This document shows positions 21,601 through 42,029 of a stretch of DNA of 64,000 bases, one piece after another (position 1 is the stretch's first letter; each line of letters starts with the position of its first letter). Below the pieces are notes generated by a model, which was given only the letters and a program-made list of their open reading frames with translations, had not been told where the DNA came from and searched no databases. Location of the stretch: positions 17,722-81,721 of the forward strand of contig PDIP01000051.1 in the NCBI GenBank assembly GCA_002811645.1. Reading direction: 5' to 3'. The stretch comes from Corallochytrium limacisporum Hawaii. Its lineage: Eukaryota > Protista > Pluriformea. The position numbers were made by a program, and so were the translations under genes.

Positions 21601-22111
21601 GTAGCTCCAAGAGGGCGTCCTTGCGCAGTTGTGGTAGGCCGAGGTAGGCGAATGGTGACATGACACCGACTTTGGCACCGCGGAACATGCCCGTGAGGGG
21701 AGGGAAGGAGGTGACACCACCCCCATGCGTGTTTACCAGCGTCACTGACTCGCAGCGGTCGTAGTATTGGCAGGCAAATTCAAGCGTGATCATGCCTCCC
21801 ATGGAGATGCCGCAAATGTGGACCTTACGCCACCCCAGGTGATCAATGACTTTGCGGGCATCGTTGGCCATGATGCCGGTGGTGAGACCGGGGGAGATGG
21901 CGGAACTCTTGCCCACACCGCGGTTATCTATGGCGCATATCTCGTACTTTTCCGGGAATTGAGAAAAGTAATCAATCTGTAGGTTCCAGCCCTCATGCTG
22001 CATGGCCAAGCCCTGGATGAACAGGATCTTGGTAGGTCCATGCCCCCAAGTCTTGTAGTGGATGGTGATGGGACCCACCATAGGGTGTCGTCCAACCATG
22101 AGGTACGGCAT
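18620..22111 (-). CDS. Alpha/beta-hydrolase fused to a degenerate wax ester synthase/DGAT-like (condensation-fold) region
   Basis: The N-terminal ~285 aa carry IQGL, DNRGVGKS, nucleophile GISMGG, acid DDSLV and AGH. The remainder carries NPRLRQRL, W..DPNFRIKSH, PLWDVLL and RIHYALSDAEG (compare HHxxxDG), plus a C-terminal segment resembling WS/DGAT C-termini. Confidence 0.8.
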   Translation of the reverse strand: MPYLMVGRHPMVGPITIHYKTWGHGPTKILFIQGLAMQHEGWNLQIDYFSQFPEKYEICAIDNRGVGKSSAISPGLTTGIMANDARKVIDHLGWRKVHICGISMGGMITLEFACQYYDRCESVTLVNTHGGGVTSFPPLTGMFRGAKVGVMSPFAYLGLPQLRKDALLELLVGADHRRNPEKVKFLNSCNVTSLSVEISNPLGFVNQVAAIFMHYVSSGRLKRVKEAGVPILIFAAIDDSLVRPLNSVVLQPDLGARLHVFTDAGHGLPIDEPEAFNHQFQDFVETVEDCKLHNVRVGHPKEFDPLGSQEWVFLSQRQQKFREALERSADPRRAEVLRSAEVKVREAIETENTCKFWSKARTNVYLPELLPELLVCEGNHMVSALFLLEEGEGDHGDVLDDNHGSHGHASSDIDSSVVTDPTGITSLDLRKGRFLAHLERVLRHWVHRNPRLRQRLYESGKRTGNFVGSGTYHWLSDPNFRIKSHMRWMEPDTKKDVNLQRLTVRLLNEPMRGDMPLWDVLLFDANECLPVDRENCSAGNANLGMLVRIHYALSDAEGCNVLLEDLLAHGSLESEVAVSRNEAMEERNTTVALHEARRDDDDAGADDSDGKREPNRDSGICVDGEEQRAHGEYDDEDDEMFHDSEEDIYTEGPSRGTTRSKKKRPVPPLPSRTEVEQAVAASGMNFSLSDLASETAEDPQKVFLRQLRADAESQRNRLARTLNESESMLGTVGGLSWYALTDPWRFTQEMLDASRLALDSTRRLLAASDLTSLQTSSKAASPFTVIPSYQVNEDVIMRSPPAKPVQTKAKKPSVTFAVDKPSTSAAGEASISTGLWSHTHQSSSSSSTSSMEEDVYSVTGNTVATQAVNEVSSMLQKATALEGIATASDAGFDVDLFINAAWLENAPLHVLNDALTALRRKSRRNHGLSDDQALTVQRWAQPDTVKGHLAVILAAIAGALARCDQRTDGHFGQDVPCRLPVSAVQKAADPTAMDTATTVAADDADFGHANGNTAKQNANSPLGYVMLPLTARSPQQRLKEMLKRLNEFGTDMEEVVLRALLFVSRKVPFGSYLTDRLHDRTVADVHPSHAAYHGKKLAGGTVRNFVTFAPNPDYGVGIAVTFHPESESFSLSVQGSQCLVPSASTFTEAMVLELRHMANAVAL

Positions 22112-25100
22112 GGTTTGTTCTTGTCTAGAGGTTACGCTGCTACGGACACTGCTGGTGTGCTAGGTGATCTTTTCTTTCAAAACCAGCGTCCAAAGCCAGG
22201 CCGTCGTCGCTCTCTAAATGATTTCTTTCTATTACCCAAATTATTGTACTATAAACTGACAATGGATATCCAAGGAAATTACCACAAAGAAGAGACCCAG
22301 TCCTTGCTGCTTCTCCCTCACAGCCCACGGACTATGCAGAAACGCCTGTCACATAGTTTCACTTGAGAGACTCTGTTTGCCAAAGTACCATTGCTACGGT
22401 GATCCAATCGGAAAGCACCCAAATGAAAACGATGAATGCACACAGTCAAATAGAAACCCCTGTGCGCGGAAACAAAACAACACAGCACAGCAGTGCACAC
22501 GCACAAAGAGTTTGTGTTTTGTGTTGGGTGTGTGTGTGTGTGTGTCACTGTGAGTGAGTGTGTGTGAGCGTGCGTGCGAGTGGGTTCTGAAGTCTTTCCT
22601 CGCTTCCCCCGTGTTCAGGAGCTGTGGGGCAACCGGCAACAAAGCAAAGCACCATCGCCACGAAATGGCTGGTAGTCTCATCGTTGCTCGGAAAACACAC
22701 GCACAATTTGTACGGAACGCGAGAAATAAAGGACAGACTACGAGAGTTCCAGGCACGGTAGAGCGAGAGCGAGAGCAAGAGAGAGAGAGTGAGAGTGAGA
22801 GCGAGAGAGAAGGAGGGGAGAAGGGCGCAAGGGGAAAAGTGCAAAGGAAAATGAAGAACCGGGGGAGCGAGAGAGGGGCGGGGAGAGGGGAACGAGGAGG
22901 AGGAGGAGGAAGGAGGGCCAAGTACAGTTGTTCCCGGCTGACCGTTGCCAGCTCCACTCCCTCCCCCCCCCCCACCTCCCGGCCGGTGGGCCGGGGGCCG
23001 TTTTTGATAATTTTTCGCAGAGACTTTTTTTTTCTTTATTTTTCAATTTTTTTATTTTGCACCGTTGCCGGCACACAGCCGCAGATTTTGTACCGGGGCA
23101 CCAAGTTTTTTGTGTTGCGTTGTATTTCACTTGCCGGCAGCAACGGGTCTTGGGGCTATCGAATTCTCTTCTCCTTCTTCTTATCGGCTCTTACGTTCAC
23201 TACTGCACCCGTCGCTCTCGCTGGTGTGGGTCTTTGCGTTTGTGAAATCACCACCCTCCCTCTCCGAAGCTGGAGCGGCCTTTGTCCCGGGCAAACAAAA
23301 AGGAAATCTTCCTTTCTTTTTTTCTTTTATTTTTTTGGTGGCACTCGCTGCCCGTCCGTACGCGCACCCTCTCGCCTGCTGCTGCTACTGGCCTTCCCCC
23401 CCCCTCCCCCACTCTTCAACCGAACCGAAAAGCAAAACCAAACCTAAAAGAAAAAGAAAAAGGAAAAGGAAAACAAGAAAAATGTAAATAAATGAGAGAC
23501 AAGGCAAAGGGTGGACAAGACGCGGATGGAGAGCACCCATCGGCCATCGCCCAATCCCAACCTCCTCCCCTCCGCGCAAGTGTGTAAAGATGGCGAAGTT
23601 TGACGGGGTATATTCTGATACTAAGCAAAATCTCTCCCTGGGCTGCCATCCCCGTTCGGGCCCCGGGGGACCAAACCAGCAGGGGATTGGGTCCAAGAAC
23701 CACTACTGGCCGAGCACCGGCGTGTCTCTAGACTAATTATAAGACATGCTATAGTATAGAATATTTGTTATATTATTTCATAATACAATGTGGGTGTTCT
23801 TTAATCTGAATTGTATAAAATAGGAGTCACAACTCGAGAGATAGATCCTTGCGTGCTTATCATTCATGCACCCGCCCCTTGCACCAAAATTTAGAAAAGT
23901 TCAGTACATTCAGTACCAAATAAGTCCCGCCCGCGTGCGTCCTCTGTCTGTCTGTCTCTCTCTCTCTCGCTCTCTCGCCTCTCTCTCTCCCGCCCTCGCC
24001 CTCGTTCTTTCTTTGTGTCCTTTTTGTTTGTGCTGTGCTGGCAGCACTGTAAAAGGATCCAAGCTGCGAGAAGGGGGGTGGGGGGGGGACCGCCACGCGC
24101 GAGGCGTTTCTGTGGGGGAGCCCTTTGGGCAATTGGCCTTCCCCCAGTACCGGCTGCAAAACTCACCGTTCGCCAGGGAGTTAAAAAAAGGAAATGAAGC
24201 GAAAAAAAAAGGGAGGGCGGCGGTGGAGATTGAAACCCCCCCCCCCAAACAAAGAAAAAGAAAACAACTAAAAATAAACCAAAGAAAAAGGATAAAAAAA
24301 GAAAACACAGAAACTTTTTGCCAGTAAAAAAGCGAAGGAAAGGAAACTCTGAGCAAGGCCGCGTACCTGTCTTCCATCGACCAAAGTGAAAAACAAAAAA
24401 AAAATGCGGACTGCCCCACACACCGCCAAAGGAAAAACCATTCGCTTACAAAGCTCAGTAATAAATCAATAGAGAACGAAAAGAGATAGAGTGCAAAGTC
24501 CGTCTTTTCTTTTATCCGCCGCACCAATAATTTGATGAAATGGGGAGAGTAGGCTCGGTTCAACCGCCCCGCCGGGGGGGGGGGGTTCACCTCCGTGCCT
24601 ACTCTGCCGCCCGGGTGTAGTGGGCCATTGACTACCGCTAAAGTCATTTTTTTCCTTGGGCCCGGGCCCCGGGCAGGAATGAGGAGAAGGGGGGGGGGTG
24701 GGTCACTCCCTTTCCCCCTCCCCCCAACCCCGTGGGGTGGCCCCTCGCCGTCCGTTTCCCTGCCCGGGCCGCCGCTGTTTGGGCACCCCGCCTCCTTTTC
24801 GGGGCTGGTTCGCTCCGTCGACTCTCTGTCACTTGCCCGGCACTGCCCCGGCAACTGCCTAAACGGCAGGAATTTAAATAAACAATGGGAGCTTCTCTAT
24901 TTTGAATATACCATGTAGTGGAGAGTGATTAGTTTTTTAATGTCCGCGACAGCGCTTCCCCGGTCTTTTTCGATTTTTCGCGCGCGATTTGCGGGGCCCT
25001 CTGATTCACCGACAGGCGGTCCTCCCCATGCGGAGAGCTAGAGAGGTGTTAGAGGCTTCGAACGGGTATCCGGTTCCACGATCCCTTCGATAACTGCACA

Positions 25101-27078: not shown

Positions 27079-30000
27079 ATGGCAGCCACGGACTTCCTGG
27101 TGAATGATACAGAGGATGCGACCAGTTGGGAACTGGAGCTCGATGAGATTGAACGGAACTTGGACGAGAACGGCTGGGATGTAGCCGAACTTATCCAACG
27201 CAGCAGACGATTATGTAAGGGACGGACGTTCGGCTCCGACGCCGCACTACGGGCGAAAGCGTACCGATGCCTGCTGGGCATCTCTGCCGACGACATTTCG
27301 TCAGCATCGAAAGCGCTGGAGTCAGAGATTGTGGCCATGCGTGATGCTGCGGTAGAAATGGCCGCAACCTCGACTGACACAGATCCGGTGGTAGGCGGCG
27401 ACGAAGTGGACACACTTGACGAAGATTCCACTGCGCCTCTGTCCCAACGAGCGAACGCGGCCGAACTGAAACGCCGCAGAGATGCCGCTCGCACCGTTGC
27501 TGAACAGTGGGGTTTGACGGACAGGCAAACGCGTCAAATGCGTGCCGCTGTCTCCGTTTTTTGCCAACGCCGCGCTTCGGCCGGTTCCGTGAAGTGGTCA
27601 AAAAGTTTACTCCTTGAGGTGATGGCCTCAACATTTATGACTGCGGGCATGGAGCCGGCCGTGACACTGGCCGCACTGGAGCACACCGTCGGTCCGTGGG
27701 TTCCTGAGCCGCTCTACGCTCCGAGCGATTCCGATCGACACCGAGCCATGGCTAGAATGGTTAATGTCCAGTTTACGTTCCTCCTCCAGTATCTTGATCC
27801 CGCACTGAGCCATATCCTGGCCACTGTGCGCGTCGATTTCCTAGACTTTGCGTGGAGTTGGCTTACGTCACTGTTTGCTGGAGCTATTGTTGTCGGGGGA
27901 AGCAGTGGTGGTGCAGAGGGATCTTCGTCGGAATCCCCGTCCTCAACAGGAGTGGTGCACACCTTGTGGGACCGCTATCTGACGGAGGGCAATCCATTGA
28001 TGATCTTCTTCATGGCGGCTGTGATCCTGGCCAACTCCTCGGAAGAATGTCAGGCCATCTACAACCGTGAGTACACTCATGGACCGGACGGTTCCAGCAC
28101 CAACGAAAAGGCCACAAAGACGCGTCAGGCACTCATAGCAGTTCTATCCAGCGCACCGACGCAGCTGTCCGCGGAAGATGTCGGGGATTTCATTGACTTT
28201 GCGAAGCTCTACGCCCGTGCGGTGCCCCTTGCGTTCTGTCACCAGTGGCGTCGATCCGTGTTCGAATCGGATGCGACGCAGGCCCCTGGAACAGGGACAC
28301 TGCTGCAGATGAAAAGCGTAGCCTGCATGACGCACCCGTCGGAGGTGTGGGGGGCGGTTGGTAAGGGTCAAGGCCTGAACTATGTGGTCCTGCGGCTCAT
28401 GAATACTCGCTCTGGACAACAATTCGCCTCCGATAAAGGAACCGCGGTCATGCCGGAAGGTATCCTGGACACGTCCAAGATTGTAGCCATAGATGTGCAG
28501 AAATGCGTTTTTGACGACCCCAGTGCACTGGACACACTCATCACTGACCGAATGTCCGCCTCGCTCGACCCAGAAACACCCAGTCCGGGCAAACCCCATA
28601 TCTGCATCATGGACAATGACTTTGGTTCTGTGTCTGGCGGTTCTGTCACCTCTGCTATGATGGATAGCGGCAGTGAGGACATGGCCGTGGCCACGGTCGT
28701 GAGCCGCTTGCTCGCACGCAACATTCCGAATGTCAGCGTTGGCGCCGGTGGCTTCCCGGCGCTGCTTGCCGTTAGCCGCGGGCAGCGGCCGACGCTAGTC
28801 AGGCCCGCACAGCCCCAGGCATCTGGCTCATCGATGGGCGCCAAGTCATGGCTGGGCGGCATGAAAGGACTGAACCTCGGCGAAACAACATCAAAGTTTG
28901 CAGACTCTCTGAAGGGCAGCACCGCAGGCGCCATGGCCATGTTTGGGTCCAAGGGAAGCAGGACATCGGAGTCGTCTACGTCGCCCACAACAGGAACAGC
29001 AGCAACCGTTGTACCATCGGGAAAATCAGGTGATGACACAAAGTCCCAAGACCAGAGGAGGAGCTCCATCGGCTTCGGATCGTTCTTTGGGTCCAAAGCA
29101 GTGGAAGAAAAAGCGGGCACAGGCGCATCCGCCGCACCAGCAAAGTCGTCTGGGATTGAACAGCAGACGCAGTCCAATGGCGGAGATCAGGCACAACAAA
29201 CATCGCAGTCTGGCACGGATTCGACTGGCAGCACCGCTCAGTTCTCCATGACATCGTTCAAGGGCTTCGGCATGGCCATGAAGGAAGGCCTGACTAAAGG
29301 CCTTAAGCAAGCACAGCATGAAGTCGCGCAGGTCAATCAGGCTCTCTTCACTCCGCTCGCGCCTGCGGTGCCTTCAGACAAAGGAGCACGGTCCATTTCT
29401 GAGGATGCAGGCGCTGCTACGTTGCCCACAGACCACACTGCGCGTGGCAGAAACTTTGGTGACGACGCAGACTCCGGCCCCAAGTCGGAAGACCCGAATA
29501 GCGGCCACAAGACATCACCCGAACGACAGTCCAAGGCCGCTGCGGGCGCGGACATCTTTGCGATCGGGGACGAGGAAGAGGAAGATGAGGGCCGAGCATC
29601 GCAGCCGGAGCCGCAAGGGCTGCAACGGTCGTCCTCGAACGAAGGATCGAAGCGGGGTTCAACGGCGTCTGCGACCGGTTCTACCACCGCGAGCAACGCC
29701 TTGGATCCAACAGAAATGATTGACGTCGAAGGATTCCTTGCGTCGCTCCCGACCAAAGGCGCCGGTGAGGTCAGGCGTGTCTTTGGCTGTGATCGAGCGA
29801 TGCGTGACGGAGTGACGGGCTCAATATTCCCCCGCCCGTCGCTGTTGGTCCTTACCGAACGGCAACTACGATTCGTGTCCGTTGCGTCACATGAAAGAAA
29901 CCGTTCTGGAATCCCAGATCCGCACGTGATTCGTCTGAACGACGTCAAGCGCATCACGGCGAACAAGAAGAACCGGCATCGGCTGACTTTCTTCATCAGA

Positions 30001-30144
30001 GATGACAGATCGCCAACTCAGCAGAGGAAGGAGATGTTAATTGTGCCCGAAGTGCACGAGGTCATTGCTGCCGTCAAAGAGCAAGTGACCATCTACAACA
30101 CCGAGGGACTGGCGGCATCGGAGTCTTCGCCAGTGAAGCAATGA
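27079..30144 (+). CDS. TBC1D23: TBC1 domain family member 23-like (TBC + rhodanese-like + C-terminal PH-like)
   Basis: LRAKAYRCLLGI, FLLQYLDPALSHIL...WLTSLF, LWDRYL, rhodanese-like HICIM...NVSVGAGGF, and C-terminal VKRITANKKNRHRLTF. Domain order is that of TBC1D23. Confidence 0.8.
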   Translation: MAATDFLVNDTEDATSWELELDEIERNLDENGWDVAELIQRSRRLCKGRTFGSDAALRAKAYRCLLGISADDISSASKALESEIVAMRDAAVEMAATSTDTDPVVGGDEVDTLDEDSTAPLSQRANAAELKRRRDAARTVAEQWGLTDRQTRQMRAAVSVFCQRRASAGSVKWSKSLLLEVMASTFMTAGMEPAVTLAALEHTVGPWVPEPLYAPSDSDRHRAMARMVNVQFTFLLQYLDPALSHILATVRVDFLDFAWSWLTSLFAGAIVVGGSSGGAEGSSSESPSSTGVVHTLWDRYLTEGNPLMIFFMAAVILANSSEECQAIYNREYTHGPDGSSTNEKATKTRQALIAVLSSAPTQLSAEDVGDFIDFAKLYARAVPLAFCHQWRRSVFESDATQAPGTGTLLQMKSVACMTHPSEVWGAVGKGQGLNYVVLRLMNTRSGQQFASDKGTAVMPEGILDTSKIVAIDVQKCVFDDPSALDTLITDRMSASLDPETPSPGKPHICIMDNDFGSVSGGSVTSAMMDSGSEDMAVATVVSRLLARNIPNVSVGAGGFPALLAVSRGQRPTLVRPAQPQASGSSMGAKSWLGGMKGLNLGETTSKFADSLKGSTAGAMAMFGSKGSRTSESSTSPTTGTAATVVPSGKSGDDTKSQDQRRSSIGFGSFFGSKAVEEKAGTGASAAPAKSSGIEQQTQSNGGDQAQQTSQSGTDSTGSTAQFSMTSFKGFGMAMKEGLTKGLKQAQHEVAQVNQALFTPLAPAVPSDKGARSISEDAGAATLPTDHTARGRNFGDDADSGPKSEDPNSGHKTSPERQSKAAAGADIFAIGDEEEEDEGRASQPEPQGLQRSSSNEGSKRGSTASATGSTTASNALDPTEMIDVEGFLASLPTKGAGEVRRVFGCDRAMRDGVTGSIFPRPSLLVLTERQLRFVSVASHERNRSGIPDPHVIRLNDVKRITANKKNRHRLTFFIRDDRSPTQQRKEMLIVPEVHEVIAAVKEQVTIYNTEGLAASESSPVKQ

Positions 30145-30509
30145 GTCATATGAAGCTCTTTGTACCACTTCTTGTATACGTAATTTTGGCGGCAGTCTTT
30201 ATTTGTTTAAGAAATTTGCTTGAAAAAGCAAGATTTTGATTGTACTTTCCATTGTCGAGTACGTATTATAGTTCAAAAAGGAGATTTGTGGTCTATCTCT
30301 CTCTCTCTCTAAAACATGTTCCTTAGCAAAGGGTTAATGTCAATCTTTGTTTTCTTTGTTGAATTTTCCTTTCAACTTGTGCTTCATTAAAGAGGCATCC
30401 GTAGATTTCATTGGCTACGGTACACAACATGGGTGATCTTGCGCGAGGACGGAGTGAAAGCACATCACGCGCTTTTGCTGCAATAGCACGTGTTCTACGT
30501 TGCTCTTCT

Positions 30510-32213
30510 TCACAGACCATTCCCGCTTCGACGCCTTGAATTGCTCGATGGCCGCCCAGGATCCATACCGTCCATTGACCCAGCTTCTGCCACCCCGCTC
30601 TTGCGGCCATGCTTGTTTTTGCGTGCCTTGCGAGACGCGCGTCGGAGGTCATCGTCCGAAGCTCCGGTAATGTCCATTTGGTTAGAACCGCCGCCCGCGT
30701 TTCCACCGTCCAATTTACGTGCGGCGTCGCCAGAGACGTCCAGCATGTGGTGCGCATTGCCCCCCGAAGCCAGCTTCGGATTCGTGCCTGCATCATTCGG
30801 GCCCGCACCGTCCGGACCGGCCGGTGTGCCTGTATTGGCAGGCCAGTTCTGGGCCATCGCACCCTGGTGAGCCCGCATCTGTGCGGCTGCGACAGGGTCG
30901 TACGTGACATTGCGAACGCCACCTCCGCGGTTGGCGTAGCCGTCGCCTCCTGGTGATGGAGTCCCCTGGTTCTGGTTCTTGTTCTTGTCCTCGTCGCTGA
31001 CGTTGTCAACATTCATGTCATTGCGACTGTTGTTCTCGTCATCACCATTGATGACTTCTGGCAACATGGTACGTTCTTCCTTTTGGCCTTCCTTGGTCTC
31101 GTCAATTGGCTCTGCATCCAGATTGTCGGGCATGCTTGCGCTCTCGGATAGACTGGAGGCAGTCTGGTCGACCTCCCAATCATAGGGCGTGTCCGTGTCA
31201 CCGCCTACTTCATGCAGCATGTCTAGCAGGATCTGGTGCAGGTAGTCGTATCGGGGCTCCCGGTAGTAGTCTAGGCTCTCAAGATGAAGGATGAATGTCT
31301 GGAATCCCTTTGGCAGCCCCTTGACCAGATTGGCGTTCGTGTAGCGCATCTTCATCCGTGCGATTTCATCCTTGTCGCTCAGACGGCGCCAAGGGAGCTT
31401 ACCGAGGGCCAGTTCCACGAGCACGTAGAAGAGCGACCAGAGGTCGTCATGCCGGCCCATTTCGCGCAGATTGTGTGCGTTCAGGGACGCATAACGTGAC
31501 GTGCCACGGAATCCAGCCTGGTGACGAGGCTGGCGTGGCTGTCCATTCGGTTGCAGGAACCTACGCGCCAGACCAAAGTCTAGCATGTACACTGACCGAC
31601 GCGTCTCCGGGGTGCGGCCAATCGCAAAGTTGGACGGCTTAACATCTCTGTGGAGGTAGCCAGCCTGGTGGATGGCCTTGAGACAGGCCAACATTTCCAT
31701 ACCGAGCTGGAGAGTGGTAGGCAGCGAGAACCGCTGGTGCGGCTGGGCCTTACGCAGTTCTGCAATGCTGCGTCCCACCAGCTCCATAATTAGGTAGTTG
31801 TACTCTGCGGTGCGACCGCTTCCAATGTAGCGGCAAACGTGCGGTCCCTTTTGCAGTGCCTTCAGCACAGCGACTTCCATACGCAGAAGCTGGTTCTTGG
31901 CATTGCCGGGTTCCACCTTGAGTGCACATTCAGTGCCATCGTTAATATGCGAGCAGAGGTAGACATCACCAAAGGCACCGCCACCGATGCGGGAGACTAC
32001 TTTCCACTTCGACTTCCAAACGGATCCGACAGGCAGTTCCTTGAACTTGGCTGCCTTTTGTGGTGGTTTACGAGCCACTTGGGGGGGTGGGAGGTTCTGT
32101 TGACTGCGGTGATGTCCTGAAGAGGTGGCGCGAGCATTGGAATTGTTTTCGCGCGATCCGAAAAAGTTTGAGGGGGCAAGCTTGCCTCCCGTCTTGCTAA
32201 TGAACTGTTCCAT
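30510..32213 (-). CDS. TTBK: Tau-tubulin kinase (CK1 group); AUG-initiated form, frame open upstream to 34097
   Basis: IGGGAFGDVY, ALKVE, LRMEVAVLKALQ, LHRDVKPSNF, MLDFGLAR, AGFRGTSRYASLNAH, EMGRHDDLWSLFY and PYDWE are characteristic of TTBK. First in-frame ATG is at 32213; the ORF-track start at 33773 is TTG. Confidence 0.92.
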   Translation of the reverse strand: MEQFISKTGGKLAPSNFFGSRENNSNARATSSGHHRSQQNLPPPQVARKPPQKAAKFKELPVGSVWKSKWKVVSRIGGGAFGDVYLCSHINDGTECALKVEPGNAKNQLLRMEVAVLKALQKGPHVCRYIGSGRTAEYNYLIMELVGRSIAELRKAQPHQRFSLPTTLQLGMEMLACLKAIHQAGYLHRDVKPSNFAIGRTPETRRSVYMLDFGLARRFLQPNGQPRQPRHQAGFRGTSRYASLNAHNLREMGRHDDLWSLFYVLVELALGKLPWRRLSDKDEIARMKMRYTNANLVKGLPKGFQTFILHLESLDYYREPRYDYLHQILLDMLHEVGGDTDTPYDWEVDQTASSLSESASMPDNLDAEPIDETKEGQKEERTMLPEVINGDDENNSRNDMNVDNVSDEDKNKNQNQGTPSPGGDGYANRGGGVRNVTYDPVAAAQMRAHQGAMAQNWPANTGTPAGPDGAGPNDAGTNPKLASGGNAHHMLDVSGDAARKLDGGNAGGGSNQMDITGASDDDLRRASRKARKNKHGRKSGVAEAGSMDGMDPGRPSSNSRRRSGNGL

Positions 32214-33704
32214 TCTGTGGTGATCTACTTTCAAACGCAAGCGCTTTCGTCCACTGTGGTGATGGCGGAAGTGGTGTTGGTGGTGGTGTCGAGTCCGGTT
32301 GTGATTTCGACGGTGATCACGTACTCCTTCTTCCGCGGCTGGGCTCCGTGAACGTTTGTGATCCGCTGTGGCTGTTGCTGCTTCTGCGTTTGCGAGTTTG
32401 GTGTTTGCGCCGGCCACAGGCTGTGGTGGTACAAACGGTTGATTGTTTTCTGCTGTGATTCCTGTCGCTGGTTTCGCTATAACCACTGCTTCCGATGGCT
32501 CTTGTCCAGTCGGGTTATTCAAATTATCCAAATGAGAATCTGCGTTCCTTCCCTTCTTGCCGTCGGCAGTCTTCACAGGATTCTGACTTAAGCTGAGGTC
32601 TTTTCCCTTGGAGGTAGTGAGGGCGTCGTCGTTGTACGGCCGTTCACCGATGTGGCGCTTCTCTACGTCGTGCTCGAGTAGCTCGTCACGCTCCTGCTGA
32701 CAAAGTGCAATTTTGGGGCGAAGGGAATCGAGTTTTCGCTCCTCTTCGAGCTTACGTTCGTGTTCCTTACGACGCTTGCGTTCTAGATACCGCTCGTGCT
32801 GCTGGCGCTTGCGGTGTTGTTGCCTTTGATATTGTCTGAACTGAAGCTCTTCTTCCCGTTCTCGACGCTCTCGTTCAATTTGAAGAGCCTTCGCGTGTTC
32901 GAATTGAGCCCGTCGCGCCTGCAGTTTATGCTGGTACTCCTGCAGGAATTGTTGCTGTTGCTGTAGTGAGGGTGGCACGCAGGTACCTATAACTGTTGGT
33001 ACAAAGCTACGGTCTTCTGCCACAAGATAATAGAAGCTTGGGTGCAACGGTGTTGATGCCGCGGCTGTCTCTGCTGCGAGTGCTGCTGCGGATCCTCGGA
33101 CGGGCTGCGGTCTCCTACCAATGCCAGTCTCAGTATAAAGCGGGTACGGTCTCACACCGACGTCGTCTTTAGATTGCTGCTGTTGCTGTCTCTGCTGAGC
33201 TTGTTGTTGCCCCTGTGGTCGCTGTTGCTGTTGCTGCTGTGGTGATGGATCCGGAGAAAGTATTTGGTAGCTTAAAATCTGCGGACCAGGGCCACAGTAG
33301 TAAAACGGTGAGAGTTGCTGCTGTCTCTGGGCAACTCCTGCTGGGGGGTAGCTCTGGTGCAGTCGCTGCGTCTGCTGAAGATTCCGAAGCGTTAGCTGGG
33401 GGCTGGGTTGCGGTGAAGTAGCAGCCTGAAGCGCTGACTGCCGCTGCTGTCCCTGTTGCGTGTGATTCCCTCGGCTTGTTCCTGGTGCTGATGCGGATGA
33501 AAACACCTGCTCCTGCTGCTGCCGCTGCTGCTGCTCCTGCTGACTTTGTTGTCCCGTTGACTTACGTTGGGTTTCTGGCGTAGATATTCTCGGAGGAGTC
33601 TGCGCCTGCTGCTGTTCTTGCTGAGGAGGATAGTGCTCTCCTGTCTGTTGTTCTTGTTGCTTTTGCTGTTGAAGTTGTTGTTGCGGCGGCTGCTCTTGCT
33701 GCTC

Positions 33705-33729
33705 TTGCTGCTGCTGCTGCTGCTGCTGC

Positions 33730-33767
<38 letters not shown>
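33705..33767 (-). repeat. (CAA)12(CAG)8CAA repeat encoding Q21
   Basis: Read directly from the sequence; in frame with TTBK. Confidence 0.95.
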
Positions 33768-33768
<1 letters not shown>

Positions 33769-33804
33769 GTCAAAGACCGACCGGTATAGAGATAACGTTG
33801 CTGA

Positions 33805-33843
33805 TCAACCCAGGCTGTAAGAGGCGAGTAGTTTCCAAGCCAT
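33805..33843 (-). promoter_or_regulatory. Single out-of-frame upstream ORF (MAWKLLASYSLG*) in the TTBK leader
   Basis: Only ATG on the minus strand between 32214 and 34387. Context GGAATGG. Stops 31 nt before the in-frame TTG at 33773. Confidence 0.5.
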
Positions 33844-34605
33844 TCCGCTTCCCGCTGAGGCGCCTGCTTGGCCCTCTTGGTTTCTCCGTAGTTCCGGTAA
33901 ATTTCAAGTGCTTTGTTGTGTAAGGACTTTACCGTGACGTCAAAAGATTCGCTGGCGCCGCGAGGGTAATATCTCCAAATATACCCTGCACTAACGGTGC
34001 TTCCAACGAACTGAACGTTACGGCTGAACTCCTGATTAAGGACGCCTTTATCTTGTAGGACTACAAAGTCCTTTGCTCTCTCTTTGTTTACCGGTGTCTA
34101 CTATAACTCTCGCTTTCCGTAACTGCGCGTTGATTCCTAGACGTGGCAAATAAATAGAAAGCTCCGTCTCAAGTCTGATTAACCTAAACCTGACCCTGAA
34201 TTTTCCGACTGGAAAATGCTTCTCTGTCTTTCTGTAAATGCAAAAAACTATCGAACGGCTTCCTGACAATGCCTTGTTGGCTACTTCAATGCCCGATTGA
34301 AAGCTGTCCTGGGTGCCTAATGTCTATTTAGAGTATTTCTTTACCACAAGTCAAGGTAGACCAGTCCTGCGTTTCGGTAGACAACCTCATGTTTACTCTT
34401 TTCTACCTCCGAAGCCGCAAGACATGACGATTCCACCCAAAGCCACGAACAAAGCACGGTTCCAAAAAGTGTCCATCGTGTTCGTTTGTCCATTGTTATC
34501 TCTGTGTCACCACGACGTCAACAAAACCATCCTCTCAGCACATGCTTCGACGAACCCGAAGGCAACAAAGGTAAAAAATTCTTCGCACACACACACACTC
34601 ACTCA

Positions 34606-34902
34606 NNNNNNNNNNNNNNNNNNNNNNNNNNNNNNNNNNNNNNNNNNNNNNNNNNNNNNNNNNNNNNNNNNNNNNNNNNNNNNNNNNNNNNNNNNNNNNN
34701 NNNNNNNNNNNNNNNNNNNNNNNNNNNNNNNNNNNNNNNNNNNNNNNNNNNNNNNNNNNNNNNNNNNNNNNNNNNNNNNNNNNNNNNNNNNNNNNNNNNN
34801 NNNNNNNNNNNNNNNNNNNNNNNNNNNNNNNNNNNNNNNNNNNNNNNNNNNNNNNNNNNNNNNNNNNNNNNNNNNNNNNNNNNNNNNNNNNNNNNNNNNN
34901 NN
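34606..34902. other. Assembly gap (N run)
   Basis: N characters, flanked by (CA)n on the left. Confidence 1.
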
Positions 34903-35070
34903 AAGCAAGCAGGGAAAGGGGGAAGGAGAGAGAGCCCCCCCCGGGGGGGGGGAGTGGGTTGAGAGAGCAGCAGCAGCAGCAGCAGCAGGCAGGCCAGGCA
35001 GGCAGAGCACAGCGCAGCAGCACGGCAGGCAGCAAGGGTGCACGGCGGAAGTCGGCGGCGAAAGGTTGGG

Positions 35071-35109
35071 AAAGGAAGGAAGGAAGGAAGGAAGGAAGGA
35101 AGGAAGGAA
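35071..35109 (+). repeat. (GGAA)n microsatellite
   Basis: Read directly from the sequence. Confidence 0.9.
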
Positions 35110-36453
35110 CGGTGGTCCCAAGGCATTTTTGGCCCCTCTCTGTTTTTTTTGCTATTTTTCTTTGGGACGATATCGGACGCCTCCCCTTTTTTTGGCCCCT
35201 TTGCCCGTTGCCTTTGCTGACTCCCGCCTCCCCCCCCGGGGCGGGTCCGAAAAAGGGGTAAAAATTGGGAAAGGTTTGGAAGAGAGGAAAGGCAGAGGGC
35301 AAAAAGAAAAAAAAGAAAGGGAGAAGAAAGGAGGAAGAGAAAAAAACCGAAGATTGGGGTCTCAAAATCAAAATCAAAACAGAAGAACAAAGAAAAAACA
35401 AACACAAAAGAAAGAAAAGAAGGGAAAAAACTCACAGTAAAGAAAAGGAAAAAAAAAAAAGAAAAGTTCCTCTTCGTCTCCCGGGCTGCTGGGGAGGGAG
35501 AGAGAGAGAGCCAAGACGAACAAAAGAAAGAAAGGGCACCCGGGGGTGGTACTGTGGCTACCGCACCGGGGCACTGCCACGCACGCCCCCTTCCCGCCGA
35601 AGGGAATAGAGGGGCGGGGGGGGAGGGGCGGCTGACACAGACTGACACGGAGAGAGAGAGAGAGACAGACACAGACACGGAGAGGGAGACAGACAGACAC
35701 AGACGCAGAGAGAGAGTGGAATGCGCTGCTCAACCCTTCCTCCGTTTTTTTGGTTCTCTTTTTTTTTTTTGGTTTTCTCTCTCTCTTTCTCTCCGGTTAA
35801 AAAGGAGAGAGAGAGAGAGAGGGGCCCAGGGGAGCGGCGAATGACTGACTGTGCCCCTGGGCGGGGGCCAGCAATGACGCAGCAGAAAAAAGGAGGAGAA
35901 GGGCAGGCCGTTCACTACCACGCACACACGCACGCACGCACGCACGCACGGACGGACAGACCTGGGCCGTGCACTTTGCACTTTGCTCCCAAAGACAACC
36001 TTCCTCCTCCCCCGAACCCCCGAACGGACCCTCCCGGGGAAAGGCAAAAGGCCCGGCCCGCCTCGCACAACGGTCCTTTCTTTCTTTCTATCTTTATTTC
36101 CTGTTTCCTTTTTTTTTTGGTCGGTGGGGTACTTGACCAAGCACGCAGTCCCGCGCAAGTTCACTCACTATCCAGCCCGTAAGCCAAGACCTCTCCCCCC
36201 CCGCGTCTCTCTCTCTCTCTCTCTGGGGCAGAATTTGATGAGATGGAATGAAATGGAGGAATGTACACAGACACAGAGAGAGAGAGTAGAGAGGGAGAGT
36301 GCCCGAAAAGAAATGAAAAGCGATTTTGGGTGCGAAGGGGAAAAATAAAAGTGCCTGATGCAATCAGAAAACCAAGCAGTTCGGACGGCACACCACCACC
36401 CCCCCCCAAAATCAATCAGAATGGAAAACAGTAGTGAAGGCAACGGCGAGGGG

Positions 36454-36660
36454 NNNNNNNNNNNNNNNNNNNNNNNNNNNNNNNNNNNNNNNNNNNNNNN
36501 NNNNNNNNNNNNNNNNNNNNNNNNNNNNNNNNNNNNNNNNNNNNNNNNNNNNNNNNNNNNNNNNNNNNNNNNNNNNNNNNNNNNNNNNNNNNNNNNNNNN
36601 NNNNNNNNNNNNNNNNNNNNNNNNNNNNNNNNNNNNNNNNNNNNNNNNNNNNNNNNNNNN
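36454..36660. other. Assembly gap (N run)
   Basis: N characters between G-rich flanks. Confidence 1.
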
Positions 36661-38271
36661 GTGGGGTGGGGTAATTTGAGTGGCCAGAGAAGGAGGGGGA
36701 GGGGGCGGGCAGGCTATAAATCAGTCAAATCCAAGAGCCAAGTAAAAAAGAAGAAGAAGGTTTTAAGAAAAAAATTATGAGGTATTTGAATTGAATTCAA
36801 AGAGTGTGTTACCCACTCCACCTCCCACCCCCTCCTCCTCTCCCTTTTAATTTTCATGCCAACCTTGGCTGGGCCCTGCCCCTTATTTTTTTTATTCCCT
36901 GACAAGTCCATTTCTTTTGTTTTCTATTGGGCAGTGGGTTATTTTGACTTTACCGAGCCAGTCCTTGCTTGCGCCCTCTCTCGCTCTCCCCTCCCTTACC
37001 GCTCCACACGGACAGACACCTCTCGACCGGGGGTTGGGAAGAGGGGGGGGCTCCCGCTAATCTCTCTCTCTGTGTGTTTTGTATGGCTCGTGCTGGCCAT
37101 GCCCAGAGCCCAAGGTTTTCTGTTCTTTTTCTTTGAACTTTGTTATCTTTGGTCCTCATCCTGCGCAGCAGGTGTGGTGTCAGCAGATGGCCAGGACGAT
37201 CGGTACTGAATGTACGGAAGATCTTCCCATTGCCATCGCGCGCTCTCTCTCTCTCTCGTTTTCCTTGCCTTTTTCTTTTGCCCGTCCGAACGCACGCCAA
37301 GAACGGGGCCTAGGGTTTTGGGTCCGTTTGCTTTTGCTTTGCTGCCCTCTCTCCACCTTCTCCCCCTCCCTCTCTCTGTCGCTCTTCTCCCCCCCCCACC
37401 CCGGGCCCACGCGAGCTGAGCCAGTTGAGTTTTTTTTAAAACATTTTTACTTTCTGGCCAATTGGCGAACGAATCAGAAATTCCCCTTATCTCCCATCTC
37501 TCCACACACACACCCCTCCCTCCCTCTTCCCCATCTCTTCATATTAAGTATGCAGCCTCTCCCCTCTCCACAACTTCCCCTCGCACCGATTATGATTCCT
37601 GGCCCTGGTATAAATTTTTTTATCGGGCCTGGAACGAATAGGGAAATTAATCAAAACTAAGAAATAAACGAATACTTAAGAAAAAGTACTGCGAAATGAT
37701 CAACACTTCAGCCAGTTCTTCAGAATGGCGTCCTATTCCCATAATTTCCTTTTTTCTTCTTTTCTTAAGTAAAAAAGAAAACCATTTCTCCACGCTCTTC
37801 TTTTCTCTCTCTCTCTCTCTTTGCTACTGTGCGGGCCCATGAGACTCTCTCTCTCTCTCTATCTCTTTCGCTCGCCCGAGCGCTCACTCGGGGTGGAGTG
37901 TTCGGAGGTGAATGTTTCCCGAAACTGCCACCCTAAACCCCCCCCAAAACCCAAAGGCCGCACACCAGAGGCCACGTGTGTGTGTTTTCAATAAGTAAGG
38001 AAAGAAAACTACCGGGCTTTATTTTTATTGGTTTCTTTTGGGGGGGGGGGGGGCAGGAGTGCCAAGAAAACAAAATAGAAAAAAATTCCCGTTAGCCCGT
38101 CTTTGGTTCCCCCCGACGCCATTTTTTCTTGGGCGTTGTGTGGTGCGTGCGGTGCGTGGTGTGTTGTTGTGTGACCAGGGCAATCTTCACCCGCTCTTGG
38201 CGGCGGTGGAGAAGGGGGGAGGAGGAGGGTGGTCAAGAGAGCAGTCTTAAACACTCTGCCCCCCCCCCCCC

Positions 38272-38481
38272 NNNNNNNNNNNNNNNNNNNNNNNNNNNNN
38301 NNNNNNNNNNNNNNNNNNNNNNNNNNNNNNNNNNNNNNNNNNNNNNNNNNNNNNNNNNNNNNNNNNNNNNNNNNNNNNNNNNNNNNNNNNNNNNNNNNNN
38401 NNNNNNNNNNNNNNNNNNNNNNNNNNNNNNNNNNNNNNNNNNNNNNNNNNNNNNNNNNNNNNNNNNNNNNNNNNNNNNNNN
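38272..38481. other. Assembly gap (N run)
   Basis: N characters after a poly-C run. Confidence 1.
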
Positions 38482-39806
38482 CCCGCCGTCTCACTCTCTC
38501 TGGGGCTGGTACTCCCACTACCGACCGAGACAAAGTCGCGAGAGGCAGGAAGAAGGGAAAAATAAATGAAGAGGGGAGGAGGGGATGCGTCGCTGGGGAG
38601 GCCCCCGGCATGAATGAAGCGGCGCCTAGGAGCAAAATGTTCCGGAATTTCCAAAGGGAAAAAGAGCCGCCCGGGGGGGGGGGGCCGGGGCGAAGCAGGG
38701 ACAAGCCGGAAGGGCCCGCAACAATTTTTTTGACCTCGGACTCTTGGGCCACCTGGACACACCGCAAAAAAAAAAGAAAGTTGAACATTCCGGCTGTATT
38801 TGCTGACCACGTAGAGTCAGTATTTCTTTATTGCATTCTCCCCCCGTTCCATCTCCCTCTCTCTCTCTCTCTCTCGCTGTGTTATGCCGCCGATGGGTGT
38901 CAAGCCATTTGGTCCACCTGAGCGTTCTCTTGTGTAGCAAATATACGTGGCAGCGGGCGCTTGCGGCACGGGCACTACTTTTGCCCTTTAGCTAATTCCT
39001 TTTTTCCCCTTTTTTCTTTCTTTCTCGCGCGGGGGTGTGTGTGTGTGTGTGTGCGGAGAGAAATCCTTGGATGGCTTGCATGGTGCGTGTGTGTCTGTGT
39101 GCCGCCGGTGTGCAAGCAGTCCTTTGCCCCACCCCCACCCCTTTCGGGGGCCGTGCCGATTTATATAGATAATCTACGGCCATAGTTTCTTGGTTGAAAT
39201 ACCAAGAAATGGAAAACTCAACCCAAAAAAAAAATACGCGGCCAGAGGGAGAAACAGGGGCAGGGAGGGCGGTGAGAGGTCAATGTTCATATCCGGAATA
39301 TTTTTATATTTATGGAATTTCCATTTATATATTGGATATTTAATATACTGACATTATTAGTTTTTATTCTTGTTGCCGATTGGCTGACTTCCGGGAGCCC
39401 CCCCACAAGGCCACCCAAAAAAAAGGGGGGGGGAGAAACAAAAGGCGGAAAAAAATAAAAAGGGAAAACGAAAAGGAAAAGGGAGGAGTGGTGGGGATGC
39501 TTCCACTCTGGTGAAAAAGTGGGAAGGGGGAGAGGGGGCAAAAAGGAGCTGGACTGCTTGATCACAAACCGCATCACCCACGTCGAAACTACAGTGTGTC
39601 AAACATCTTAGATTTATTGAATTAAGAAGTGTACATCAAGTGATGATGGATGACAACGACAATGACAGTGGTCATCGTCTACGACAGGTTGCCAATGTTG
39701 AGAAATGTGAAGAAGATGGTGATGTAGCTGCGGCTGGTGGTGTTGTGGTGGTGGTGATGATGATGATAATGTCTCAAGCCCGACAATGACATGGGCAAAG
39801 TCATGA

Positions 39807-39981
39807 TTGCTGAATGGGAGTTGGTTGTTTGATATCGGGCGATGCGAGCATTTCCCCTGCGATGGTGTGATGGAGAAAGAGTTTCACACTCAGCACGCCG
39901 TCAGTGTGTCTTATTCATTGTTTAGTATGACGGGACAAAACAACCTCGGATTGTGATGGAAACTCCCATGCAATGAAGCAA
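39807..39981 (-). promoter_or_regulatory. Candidate SECIS element in the TrxR 3' UTR
   Basis: Core UGAC (39903-39900) / CGAU (39837-39834), helix GGCGUGCUGAGUG/UGCUCGCAUCGCC, unpaired AAA (39884-39882) and apical mini-stem. Basal helices GGUUGUUU/AAACAACC and AUGGGAGUU/AACUCCCAU. Confidence 0.6.
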
Positions 39982-40094
39982 GATGAGTAATGATGATGAT
40001 GATGATGATGATGATTATGTGTGGATTACCCTCCCTGGACACTGAAAAACATGATCGTTGAGATGATGATGCAGATCAGTTCGGCCCAAGGAGC

Positions 40095-42029
40095 TTAGCC
40101 TCAGCAGCCCGTGACCTCTGCGTCCTCCCCTGTGGACTTGGAGGCCTTGATCCTGAGCAGTTCCTCGGCTCCCGTTGGGTGAATGCCGACGCTATCGTTG
40201 AGGTCGCCCCATGTGAGGCCCAGGGGCGTCGACATGGCCACTGAAAAGCCCTGCAACACCTCTCCAGCGTTTGGTCCGTAGTAGTGTATGCCCACGACCT
40301 GTGCGTCGTGGTCGAGACGGGGTTGTGGTCCTCCCGTGGTGTGCTCGCCCATCCGCTCTCGCGCAGCGACGGGCACAGGACGCTTGACGATGACCTTCGC
40401 ATATCCTGGCGGGAACAGACTTTGTCGCGGTGTCACACTCCACTCCAAGGGTTCAAAGTAAGCGTGGAAGACTTCAATGTGCCGGGGAATGTCCATGAGT
40501 ATGTCCTGCTCGTCCATGTCGGCTCCTTCTGCCCCCGACTGTGTCGGAAAAGGAGGTTCATTAAAAAGCGCTAGAGCCTCCTCTTCGCTCATGCCCACGC
40601 ATGCATACTCCATGGGCGTGAAAACAGTGGTCGGAACAGTGCGCAGCCGGCGCTCCAACGCTGTGCCCCAGAGCGGATCAGACTGGGAGGGAGACGTGAC
40701 CACAGTTGGGCCGGAGGCGATCAGAGGGTTGGAGCTCTCGGACTGCGCAAAGAGACGGTCGGCGAGGTGCTTACCCTGTTGTACGGCGACCGGAGTGAGT
40801 TCTGGGAAGCCTGTGCTTGCGCAGTCGCCGATGGCAAAGATTCCGGCAACACTCGTCTCCGCCGTGAAGGGGTGTGCGAGGACCTTGGCGCTACGGTCAT
40901 CGATTTCAACCCCGAGGCTCTCGACGAGGCCTTGGACCGTATCGACCTCGGGCCTGCGTCCAGTGGCGACCACGACCGTGTCGAAAGCATCAGCGTGCTC
41001 GTCACCACAGTCCACTCCCTTCCACCGGACGGTGAGCCCGGGTCTGCCAGCCCCGTCCTCGGTGTCCGAGGATTCCGCGCCGATTGGAATGAACCCACGG
41101 TGGACTTTGACATCTATGGACCGCAAACCGTCGAGCACGAGCTCTGACATCTGCCGATCGAACCCACGCAGGGGGATGCTCCGGAACAGCAGATGCACAG
41201 GGAAGCCTAGGGACCGCAGAAATCCCGCCGTTTCCAGTGCCACGTACCCGGAGCCGACAACCAGTGTCTTGCCCGGGGCGCGGGGCAGAGTAAATATGTC
41301 GTCGCTCGTAATGATACGCTGCGGATCCACGGACTGCAGTGCCTCAGGTATGTACGGCCGGCCCCCCACGGCAACGACGACGTTCCGAGCGTGCAGCTGC
41401 GGTGGCAGAAGCTTTGCTTTCTTTGGATTCGCCGGAGCAAGAATCGTTTTGAAGGTCGGCGGTGATATGCTATCTGGGCCCCCTGATTCCCTATCAATGA
41501 GTACCCCGTAGGCATTGTAATAATTTGCGGAGCGCGCTCGGAGCTGTGTGCGATGGCCAAAATTTAACGGAAGGATATGATCTTGCACGGACTGGACCAA
41601 CTTTTGCCAGTCGACGCCCGATTCGATTGATAGTGCATCTTTTTCGGGCGCTTTCAGACCAAATGGCTCCTGATCATACAGAGCGGACAGCCGCAGCTCA
41701 CCGGCACGATGAAACAGTTTCTTCGGTATGCACCCGACATTCACGCACGTTCCCCCGAGGCCCCAGGTCGACCCGTGCTCGGAGGGCCGTACGGCATCCA
41801 GGACGGCGACTGAAGCACCGTGCTCTGCCGCACGCTTAGCGCAGGCCAGGCCGCCACTACCGCCACCGATAACGAGCAGATCTAATGGATCTTTGGAATT
41901 GGAGCCCGCCGCACTTCCGGTCATGCCGCCAGCGCTGTTGTTGATCAGAGACCGTCTCTGGTGCAGTAGCACAGTGGCCAGAATGGGTCTAGCCGGCGAT
42001 CCGGGACGGTGGTACCGTGCCAGGGACAT
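40095..42029 (-). CDS. TXNRD2: Selenocysteine-containing large thioredoxin reductase, probably mitochondrial (TXNRD2-like), ending Gly-Cys-Sec-Gly
   Basis: IGGGSGGLA, LGGTCVNVGCIPKK, PELTPVA, VPTTVFTPMEY, VGIHPT. 3' end reads GGC TGC TGA GGC TAA (UGA at 40103-40101). Arg-rich presequence from ATG 42029. Confidence 0.93.

What the first reader, a model, noticed from the sequence alone, without database searches (positions are those of the whole stretch)
32214..34387. Tau-tubulin kinase with a 628-codon AUG-free in-frame extension: candidate non-AUG initiation and leaky-scanning system with a single uORF
Seen: the TTBK frame is open from 34097, but its first Met is at 32213. Scanning the sense strand by eye, 32214-34387 (about 2170 nt) has exactly one ATG in any frame, against about 34 expected at 1 per 64 nt, and the kinase part downstream has many. 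The single ATG (33843) opens a 12-aa out-of-frame uORF ending just before an in-frame TTG. The extension looks like protein (Q21, Q/P-rich region, charged coiled coil, His tract). Known: AUG depletion in all frames over an open extension is the signature of near-cognate initiation plus leaky scanning to a downstream AUG. Inference: one mRNA yields a short kinase (567 aa) and a long form of up to ~1190 aa with a prion-like N-terminus, tuned by the uORF. Candidate starts are ACG at 33935 (GTC ACG G) and TTG at 33773. An extension this long would be exceptional.
Basis: partly seen in the sequence, partly recalled or inferred. Interest (0 to 1): 0.85.

Follow-up and report, generated by a model that had tools for sequence, protein, structure and literature searches.

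The report
Kinase with hidden non-AUG long form
In a single-celled relative of animals, the messenger for a tau-tubulin kinase carries about 1,900 extra protein-coding letters with almost no normal start signal, so the cell probably makes a short enzyme and, from an unusual start, a much longer one; this is a known trick at a greater length than the cases I found, and the long protein has not yet been seen.

Summary
Observation confirmed. The genome matches Corallochytrium limacisporum (24.1 Mb, almost no introns). The minus-strand TTBK frame is open for 628 codons before its first Met (32213). The only ATG in 34389-32214 is 33843, which opens a 12-codon uORF; 10-32 ATGs are expected, depending on the null.

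New evidence: contigs from two independent, probably RNA, runs end at 34342/34343. They cross the uORF region unspliced and without an indel, so the likely leader is 2129 nt with one AUG. Coding periodicity in the kinase frame starts upstream of the uORF, and in-frame CUG is also depleted. The extension holds Q21, a predicted 106-residue helix, a His-rich patch and an NLS-like motif.

Best reading (0.55): near-cognate initiation (ACG 33935 most likely; TTG 33773 unlikely) gives a kinase of about 1140 aa, while scanning or reinitiation over 1630 AUG-free nt gives the 567-aa form. This resembles fungal cpc-1 but is about twice as long as the cases I found. Translation, the start codon and conservation in other species are not shown.

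The scan noted this same stretch in another window (s1-578681), and AUG-depleted leaky-scanning candidates at other loci of this genome.

The parts
34342..34343 (-). Probable 5' end of the mRNA (contig ends; inferred, since contigs cannot prove a start or a strand)
   Evidence: contigs of two independent runs end at 34342 and 34343 with no loose ends; no coverage in 34344-34586, which holds 6 ATGs in 243 nt
34104..34342 (-). Non-coding part of the leader; AUG-free, no significantly stable structure
   Evidence: Stops in all frames and negative coding score; 1-nt insertion at 34143 and two substitutions in the second sample; folding z between -1.7 and 1.5
34098..34103 (-). Tandem in-frame stops TAG TAG: 5' limit of the TTBK open frame; not used as a splice acceptor in the contigs
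33774..34097 (-). 108 codons with coding periodicity in the TTBK frame; holds the candidate starts AAG 34073, ATT 33980, ACG 33935 (G at -3 and +4), ATT 33902, AAG 33878
   Evidence: z 3.5-4.1 against stop-free shuffles; contexts; one strain difference, TAT>TAC at 33969, silent; no homologue
33933..33935 (-). ACG, best candidate start of the long form (1141 aa, about 129 kDa)
   Evidence: Best codon and context among in-frame codons upstream of the uAUG; not edited to AUG in the contigs; inference
33805..33843 (-). 12-codon AUG uORF in the -1 frame relative to TTBK, ending GGT TGA; the only AUG of the 2129-nt leader
   Evidence: unchanged in both samples
33174..33767 (-). Q-rich low-complexity region (44% Gln, Q21 at 33767-33705) with two FYY motifs nearby; predicted mostly disordered
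32649..32966 (-). 106-residue charged alpha-helix (44% E/R/K) containing RKRRK
   Evidence: AlphaFold helix 378-483, pLDDT about 88-97 over most of it, single-sequence model
32229..32318 (-). His/Arg-rich patch followed by the NLS-like RKRLRLK, 5 codons before the AUG, so present only in the long form
   Evidence: function inferred
32214..33842 (-). AUG-free scanning path of about 1630 nt that is also open and coding-like in the TTBK frame; in-frame CUG depleted, less structured than the kinase CDS
   Evidence: over the whole extension, CTG is 3 of 41 Leu codons against 31%, P=3e-4; median 80-nt MFE -14.6 against -21.4 kcal/mol; partly a composition effect
30510..32213 (-). AUG-initiated TTBK short form, 567 aa (62 kDa); kinase domain 32003-31344 with intact catalytic motifs
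   Evidence: Pfam Pkinase E=4e-29; about 50% identity to TTBK1/2 and Asator; groups with animal TTBK, SH-aLRT 96, long branch, quick tree; motifs

Best explanation
One unspliced mRNA starting near 34342 encodes two TTBK forms with a shared C-terminus. Scanning 43S complexes meet no AUG for 500 nt. A minority initiate at an in-frame near-cognate codon upstream of the uORF (most likely ACG 33935, possibly also ATT 33980 or AAG 34073). These make a kinase of about 1140-1190 aa whose N-terminal half adds a Q-rich disordered region, a long charged helix, a His/Arg patch and an NLS-like motif. The rest reach the single AUG at 33843. They either leak past it or translate 12 codons and resume scanning, then cross 1630 AUG-purged nt to the AUG at 32213 and make the 567-aa kinase. 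The uORF damps the short form but cannot block the long one, so start-codon stringency and ternary-complex levels would shift the ratio. Shown: the anatomy, AUG and CUG depletion, coding periodicity, and unspliced contigs over 34343-33770. Inferred: one continuous transcript across the CAA repeat, translation of both forms, the start codon, regulation, and a nuclear or condensate location of the long form.
For: Open frame and AUG depletion far beyond composition and beyond all other genes sampled. No splice or indel in contigs of two studies; the contig ends coincide with the edge of AUG depletion. The same runs hold 30600-33150. Coding signal upstream of the uAUG: 33935-33846 z 2.4-2.7; 34097-33846 open with P=0.013 and scoring above all stop-free shuffles. 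The only strain indel lies outside the open frame. The short form alone has the usual TTBK layout: about 60-70 residues before the kinase domain, against at most 109 in the listed homologues. eIF1-, DENR- and eIF2D-sized SUI1 frames and three W2 proteins are present (identities judged from frame length only). The same geometry is proven by reporters and ribosome profiling for Neurospora cpc-1 (PMC5487733).
Against: No ribosome, peptide or reporter data. No relative with the extension was found. No stable hairpin lies downstream of any candidate start. Coding periodicity continues about 50 codons 5' of the ACG, where only ATT in poor context and AAG are available, and this is unexplained. A second transcription start near 32250 cannot be excluded.
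Confidence: 0.55

Rival explanations
1. The single AUG is the real start of the long form. Ribosomes translate the 12-codon uORF and shift +1 at or before GGU-UGA into the TTBK frame (1110 aa), as in antizyme. Those that terminate reinitiate at 32213.
For: It explains why exactly one AUG is kept. The uORF is in the frame that a +1 shift would join, and it ends UGA-U, a common antizyme stop context (PMC1874602). The cpc-1 authors raise the same alternative.
Against: The TTBK frame is open and coding-like for 84 codons upstream of the uAUG, which a frameshift does not need. GGU-UGA is not among the antizyme sites named in the passages read (UCC, CCC, GCG, CCG, UUU, AUU, GUU, CUU). No 3' stimulatory structure.
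Confidence: 0.12
2. Vestige: the long form once began at a weak AUG (ACG 33935 and AAG 34073 are each one change from ATG) in an ordinary two-AUG leaky-scanning pair. That AUG was lost recently, so the extension is now little translated and has not yet decayed.
For: It accounts for AUG depletion and for coding signal reaching about 34076. The two samples differ by only about 1% here, too little to expose decay.
Against: Both samples lack the AUG. The second sample has 1 indel in about 240 non-coding nt but none in the 328 open-frame nt examined, and its one change there is silent (very few events). An overlapping out-of-frame uORF in fair context is not explained.
Confidence: 0.12
3. EIF4G2-type gene: the non-AUG long form is the main or only functional product, and the uORF is a sink for leaky ribosomes. 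The short form is minor or comes from its own transcription start.
For: EIF4G2 has a GUG start followed by a short out-of-frame AUG ORF (PMC9082881), as here 92 nt after the ACG.
Against: A sink does not require 1630 further nt without any AUG. The depletion ends exactly at an AUG with A at -3 and G at +4 that gives a normally built TTBK.
Confidence: 0.12
4. Splicing or an assembly error supplies an in-frame AUG: an upstream exon joined at 34098, or an intron from 33809 into the CAA/CAG repeat.
For: TAG TAG could be a tandem acceptor. A frame-restoring GT..AG pair exists (33809-33704, 106 nt). Assembly gaps lie upstream at about 34606-34902.
Against: Contigs of two studies pass both sites with no joint, loose end or indel. 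The donor GTTGAT and the AAG acceptor are poor. The species has 0.0 introns per CDS kb (PMC5560861). The AUG depletion would still need explaining.
Confidence: 0.05
5. A long, AUG-purged 5' UTR whose open frame is a by-product of CAA/CAG repeats; only the 567-aa kinase is made.
For: No homologue of the extension in any library searched.
Against: 18 in-frame stops expected under local shuffles, 0 seen; the other frames have 16 and 21 stops. Frame-specific codon periodicity, a confident 106-residue helix, and repeat units kept in one frame.
Confidence: 0.04

Closest known systems
Neurospora crassa / Pezizomycotina cpc-1 (PMC5487733)
   Same: In-frame near-cognate codons (incl. ACG, AUU) upstream of an out-of-frame AUG uORF give N-terminally extended forms that bypass the uORF; the uORF is in the -1 frame; the main AUG lies downstream.
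   Different: cpc-1 has two uORFs, a 703-nt leader (about 234 codons), conservation over about 100 species and experimental proof, and encodes a bZIP factor. Here: one 12-codon uORF, a 2129-nt leader, 574-628 codons, a kinase, one species, no experiment.
Human non-AUG N-terminal extensions (PMC3105428; PANTs such as MYC, PMC9082881)
   Same: Near-cognate start plus a downstream AUG give forms with a shared C-terminus.
   Different: Lengths in that survey are 15-235 codons (known cases) and up to 300 (predicted); this one is about twice the longest.
Rice tungro bacilliform virus ORFs I-III (PMC3542737)
   Same: AUU start, one weak AUG, then a long coding region without AUG that ribosomes scan (about 895 nt).
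   Different: Viral, with separate ORFs and shunting. Here: a cellular mRNA, one frame, 1630 nt.
Green-algal and Drosophila bicistronic mRNAs read by leaky scanning (PMC11291117)
   Same: An upstream coding region depleted of AUG lets ribosomes reach a downstream start.
   Different: Those have a weak AUG start and two separate ORFs. Here the upstream coding region has no AUG start and is fused in frame.
Tau-tubulin kinases TTBK1/2 and Asator (CK1 group)
   Same: About 50% identity in the kinase domain; sister to the animal clade in the tree.
   Different: The listed homologues have at most 109 residues before the kinase domain (that search saw only 312-992-aa proteins). No paper on a non-AUG TTBK form turned up.

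Membership tests
Tau-tubulin kinase (TTBK) | CK1-group kinase domain closer to TTBK than to CK1 | tested here: met
   About 50% identity to named TTBK/Asator proteins against 30-34% to the best paralogues in its own genome; SH-aLRT 96 with the animal TTBK clade, quick tree, long branch
Tau-tubulin kinase (TTBK) | Intact catalytic motifs | tested here: met
   Gly loop, AxK, HRDVKPSN, DFG and GTxRYAS present
Non-AUG N-terminal extension (cpc-1 type) | Stop-free in-frame extension without AUG upstream of the main AUG | tested here: met
   628 codons
Non-AUG N-terminal extension (cpc-1 type) | Extension lies on the mature, unspliced transcript | tested here: inconclusive
   Met for 34343-33770 and 30600-33150. 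33151-33769 not examined; continuity across the repeat not shown; RNA status is the tool's guess
Non-AUG N-terminal extension (cpc-1 type) | In-frame near-cognate codon in good context upstream of the inhibitory uORF | tested here: met
   ACG 33935 with G at -3 and +4, 92 nt before the uAUG; context score about the 20th percentile of this genome's AUG starts
Non-AUG N-terminal extension (cpc-1 type) | Coding selection and a conserved start across species | tested here: inconclusive
   Single-genome periodicity is positive; one silent strain change; no orthologue available
Non-AUG N-terminal extension (cpc-1 type) | Ribosome footprints or protein from the extension | not testable with these tools
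   No ribosome profiling or proteomics data at hand
Non-AUG N-terminal extension (cpc-1 type) | Hairpin about 14 nt downstream that enhances the start (optional feature) | tested here: not met
   No z below -1.0 after any upstream candidate
GCN4/ATF4/cpc-1 delayed-reinitiation switch | At least two AUG uORFs, one permissive and one inhibitory | tested here: not met
   One AUG uORF in the probable leader
Antizyme-type +1 frameshift | AUG ORF1 ending in UGA overlapping an AUG-less ORF2 in the +1 frame | tested here: met
   Geometry fits
Antizyme-type +1 frameshift | Known shift-site codon and stimulatory element | tested here: not met
   GGU-UGA is not among the sites in the passages read; no 3' structure

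The most novel reading that the evidence does not exclude
A cellular mRNA uses a non-AUG start and one uORF to switch a conserved kinase between a 62-kDa form and a 129-135-kDa form that carries a condensate-forming, nucleus-directed N-terminal half. Ribosomes bound for the short form scan 1.6 kb of protein-coding RNA. Together with other AUG-purged loci noted in this genome, this would mean that an animal relative that has lost its introns makes protein isoforms at translation initiation rather than by splicing.
Probability: 0.3. Interest if true: 0.85.

Novelty: new variant of a known kind. Interest (0 to 1): 0.66.

Why it matters
If translated, this would be about twice as long as the non-AUG extensions in the papers I read (300 codons or fewer). 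The scanned coding distance would also be nearly twice the classic viral example (895 nt). Half of a TTBK protein would be invisible to AUG-based annotation. It gives a natural substrate for asking how far 40S subunits scan or reinitiate through translated RNA. It suggests how an almost intron-free holozoan with reduced NMD and splicing factors (PMC5560861) diversifies its proteins. C. limacisporum can be stably transfected (bioRxiv 10.1101/2020.11.12.379420), so the model can be tested directly. Limits: one gene, one lineage, a known class of mechanism, and no translation data.

Tried and rejected
Homologue searches for the extension found nothing: phmmer against 1.84 billion representatives hit only the kinase start; word-index searches of residues 240-680 and 1-110 (these see only 657-2091-aa proteins); ESM Atlas; Pfam; PDB; JGI metagenomes gave only distant kinases. 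Exact look-up of three isoforms failed. Two marine metagenome runs gave no contig on the leader. The extension and leader are single-copy in the genome. Rfam has no hit in the leader. A fold of the first 108 codons was uninformative (pLDDT 38), and so was the sigma-70 scan.

Rejected: TTG 33773 as the main start (poor context, coding signal upstream of it); C-to-U editing of ACG to AUG, splicing at TAG TAG, a 33809 donor, and an indel in the uORF, all for the major form; readthrough of the double TAG (the strain indel at 34143 lies in that upstream region).

I did not seek more genome letters by another route, so the background is 264 kb plus ten kinase loci. The tree is the quick version; the careful run did not finish.

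Full report
Organism and gene. The window lies on contig C233 of a 24,109,830-base assembly in 286 contigs. This matches the 24.1-Mb Corallochytrium limacisporum genome, reported with 0.0 introns per kb of coding sequence and partial loss of NMD and splicing factors (PMC5560861). The identification rests on size and gene structure, not on a label. The gene is a tau-tubulin kinase: Pfam Pkinase at residues 699-918 of the open frame, about 50% identity to TTBK1/2 and Asator, sister to the animal TTBK clade in a quick tree (SH-aLRT 96, long branch), and catalytic motifs intact.

Observation. On the minus strand the frame is open from 34097 to 30510. The first Met is codon 629 (32213). The only ATG from 34389 to 32214 is at 33843 and opens a 12-codon uORF in the -1 frame. 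Out-of-frame ATGs: 1 seen, against 9.9 and 8.0 in codon and synonymous shuffles, with none of 5000 shuffles as low. Local dinucleotide shuffles predict 10.4 ATGs and 18.3 in-frame stops. Low-hydrophobicity coding windows from this genome predict about 32 ATGs. Among 72 long ORFs in 264 kb this is the extreme case. The two CK1-like paralogues checked have lead-ins of 19 and 9 codons. Low complexity alone gave at most a 720-nt ATG-free run in another gene.

Transcript evidence. Two runs from separate studies, RNA by the tool's guess, hold 100% and 84% of the sampled words of 30600-33150. On 33770-34586 each gives one contig that ends at 34342 or 34343 and runs past 33770 with no joint, loose end or indel in the uORF. 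Nothing covers 34344-34586, and that stretch holds 6 ATGs in 243 nt. The edge of AUG depletion therefore matches the probable 5' end, which gives a 2129-nt leader with one AUG. Contigs cannot prove a start or strand and they drop rare forms. 33151-33769 was not examined, so a single transcript across the repeat is inferred. The second sample differs by a 1-nt insertion and two substitutions in the non-coding leader, and by one silent change (33969) in the open frame. This fits the model but is weak evidence.

Where coding begins. A three-periodic model trained on about 60 genes turns from strongly negative to positive at about 34076-33968. Against stop-free shuffles, 34097-33774 scores z 3.5-4.1 and 33935-33846 z 2.4-2.7; real N-termini have a median of 2.9. 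The kinase frame is thus under apparent coding constraint upstream of the only AUG. In-frame near-cognate codons there are AAG 34073, ATT 33980, ACG 33935, AAG 33929, ATT 33902, AAG 33878, AGG 33875 and AAG 33869. ACG has the best pairing of codon and context (G at -3 and +4), while TTG 33773 has a very poor context. Unexplained: the signal continues 5' of the ACG (34097-33936, z 1.9-2.4). This could reflect a minor upstream start, a lost ancestral AUG, or segments chosen after the fact. In-frame CUG, the strongest near-cognate codon in many systems (PMC3542737), is rare in the extension: 3 of 41 Leu codons against 31% (P=3e-4). The leader and extension fold less stably than the kinase CDS (partly a composition effect). 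Both suit a scanned region. No enhancer hairpin follows any candidate start.

The extension. It has Q21 within a 44%-Gln region, two FYY motifs, a 106-residue E/R/K helix predicted with high confidence, KRSRSP, an interrupted His-rich patch, and RKRLRLK five codons before the AUG. These suggest a nuclear or condensate-prone long form. The link to speckles is weak: the human signal was defined on runs of five or more His (PMC2644819) and this organism has few introns. No homologue was found anywhere. The extension may be lineage-specific, or near relatives may be absent from these collections.

Mechanism. The sequence needs two things explained at once: an open, coding-like frame with no AUG start, and removal of AUG in all frames right down to the kinase AUG. 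Near-cognate initiation upstream of the uORF, plus leaky scanning or reinitiation to 32213, explains both (0.55). A +1 frameshift from the uORF explains the lone AUG but not the coding signal upstream of it, and GGU-UGA is not among the antizyme sites in the passages read (0.12). A recently lost AUG (0.12) and an EIF4G2-like long-only gene (0.12) remain open. Splicing or assembly error (0.05) and a chance open frame (0.04) are largely excluded. SUI1- and W2-domain factors are present, but this does not separate the models.

Comparison. The closest proven system is fungal cpc-1: near-cognate codons upstream of an out-of-frame uORF, a 703-nt leader, and in-frame footprints (PMC5487733). Human extensions reach 235 codons (known) or 300 (predicted) in PMC3105428. 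The classic long scan is about 895 nt in rice tungro bacilliform virus (PMC3542737). Green algae use AUG-poor upstream ORFs (PMC11291117). This locus works like these. It is not a two-uORF GCN4-type switch. Membership among proven non-AUG extensions awaits translation data. My literature search was limited to the library provided, so 'longest' means longest among the cases I found.

Earlier notes of this scan flag the same stretch from another window, and several AUG-depleted bicistronic or extension candidates elsewhere in this genome. I did not test those other loci; they are leads, not support.

Verdict. A real and statistically strong feature, with contig evidence against the simple artefacts. 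It is a new, unusually long variant of a known translational device, testable in a transfectable organism. Interest 0.66.

Noticed in passing
window 40095-42029 (-): The thioredoxin reductase-like ORF ends GGC TGC TGA GGC TAA, that is Gly-Cys-Sec-Gly-stop, the selenoprotein TrxR terminus. No Rfam SECIS hit at E<=1 in 30000-40200.
   Followed up: partly
window 34344-40095: A 5.7-kb stretch with no apparent gene, rich in microsatellites and with three assembly gaps, upstream of TTBK; long for this compact genome. It includes an ATG-free run of 1731 nt (36857-35126, minus strand, 207 N). The two probably-RNA runs do not cover 34344-34586.
   Followed up: no
window 49793-51259 (+): GAS8/DRC4 flagellar dynein-regulatory gene (Pfam GAS, E=4e-74), with an intact frame.
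   Followed up: no
L011-L012 joined, offset 19820-22793 (-) in C186:10001-210000: A 991-aa ORF with a 720-nt all-frame ATG-free run in a Ser/Arg/Thr-rich region; used as the low-complexity control.
   Followed up: partly
window 22681-23540 (both strands): ATG-free runs of 859 nt (minus) and 631 nt (plus) in a long simple-repeat-rich intergenic region between 22111 and 27079.
   Followed up: no
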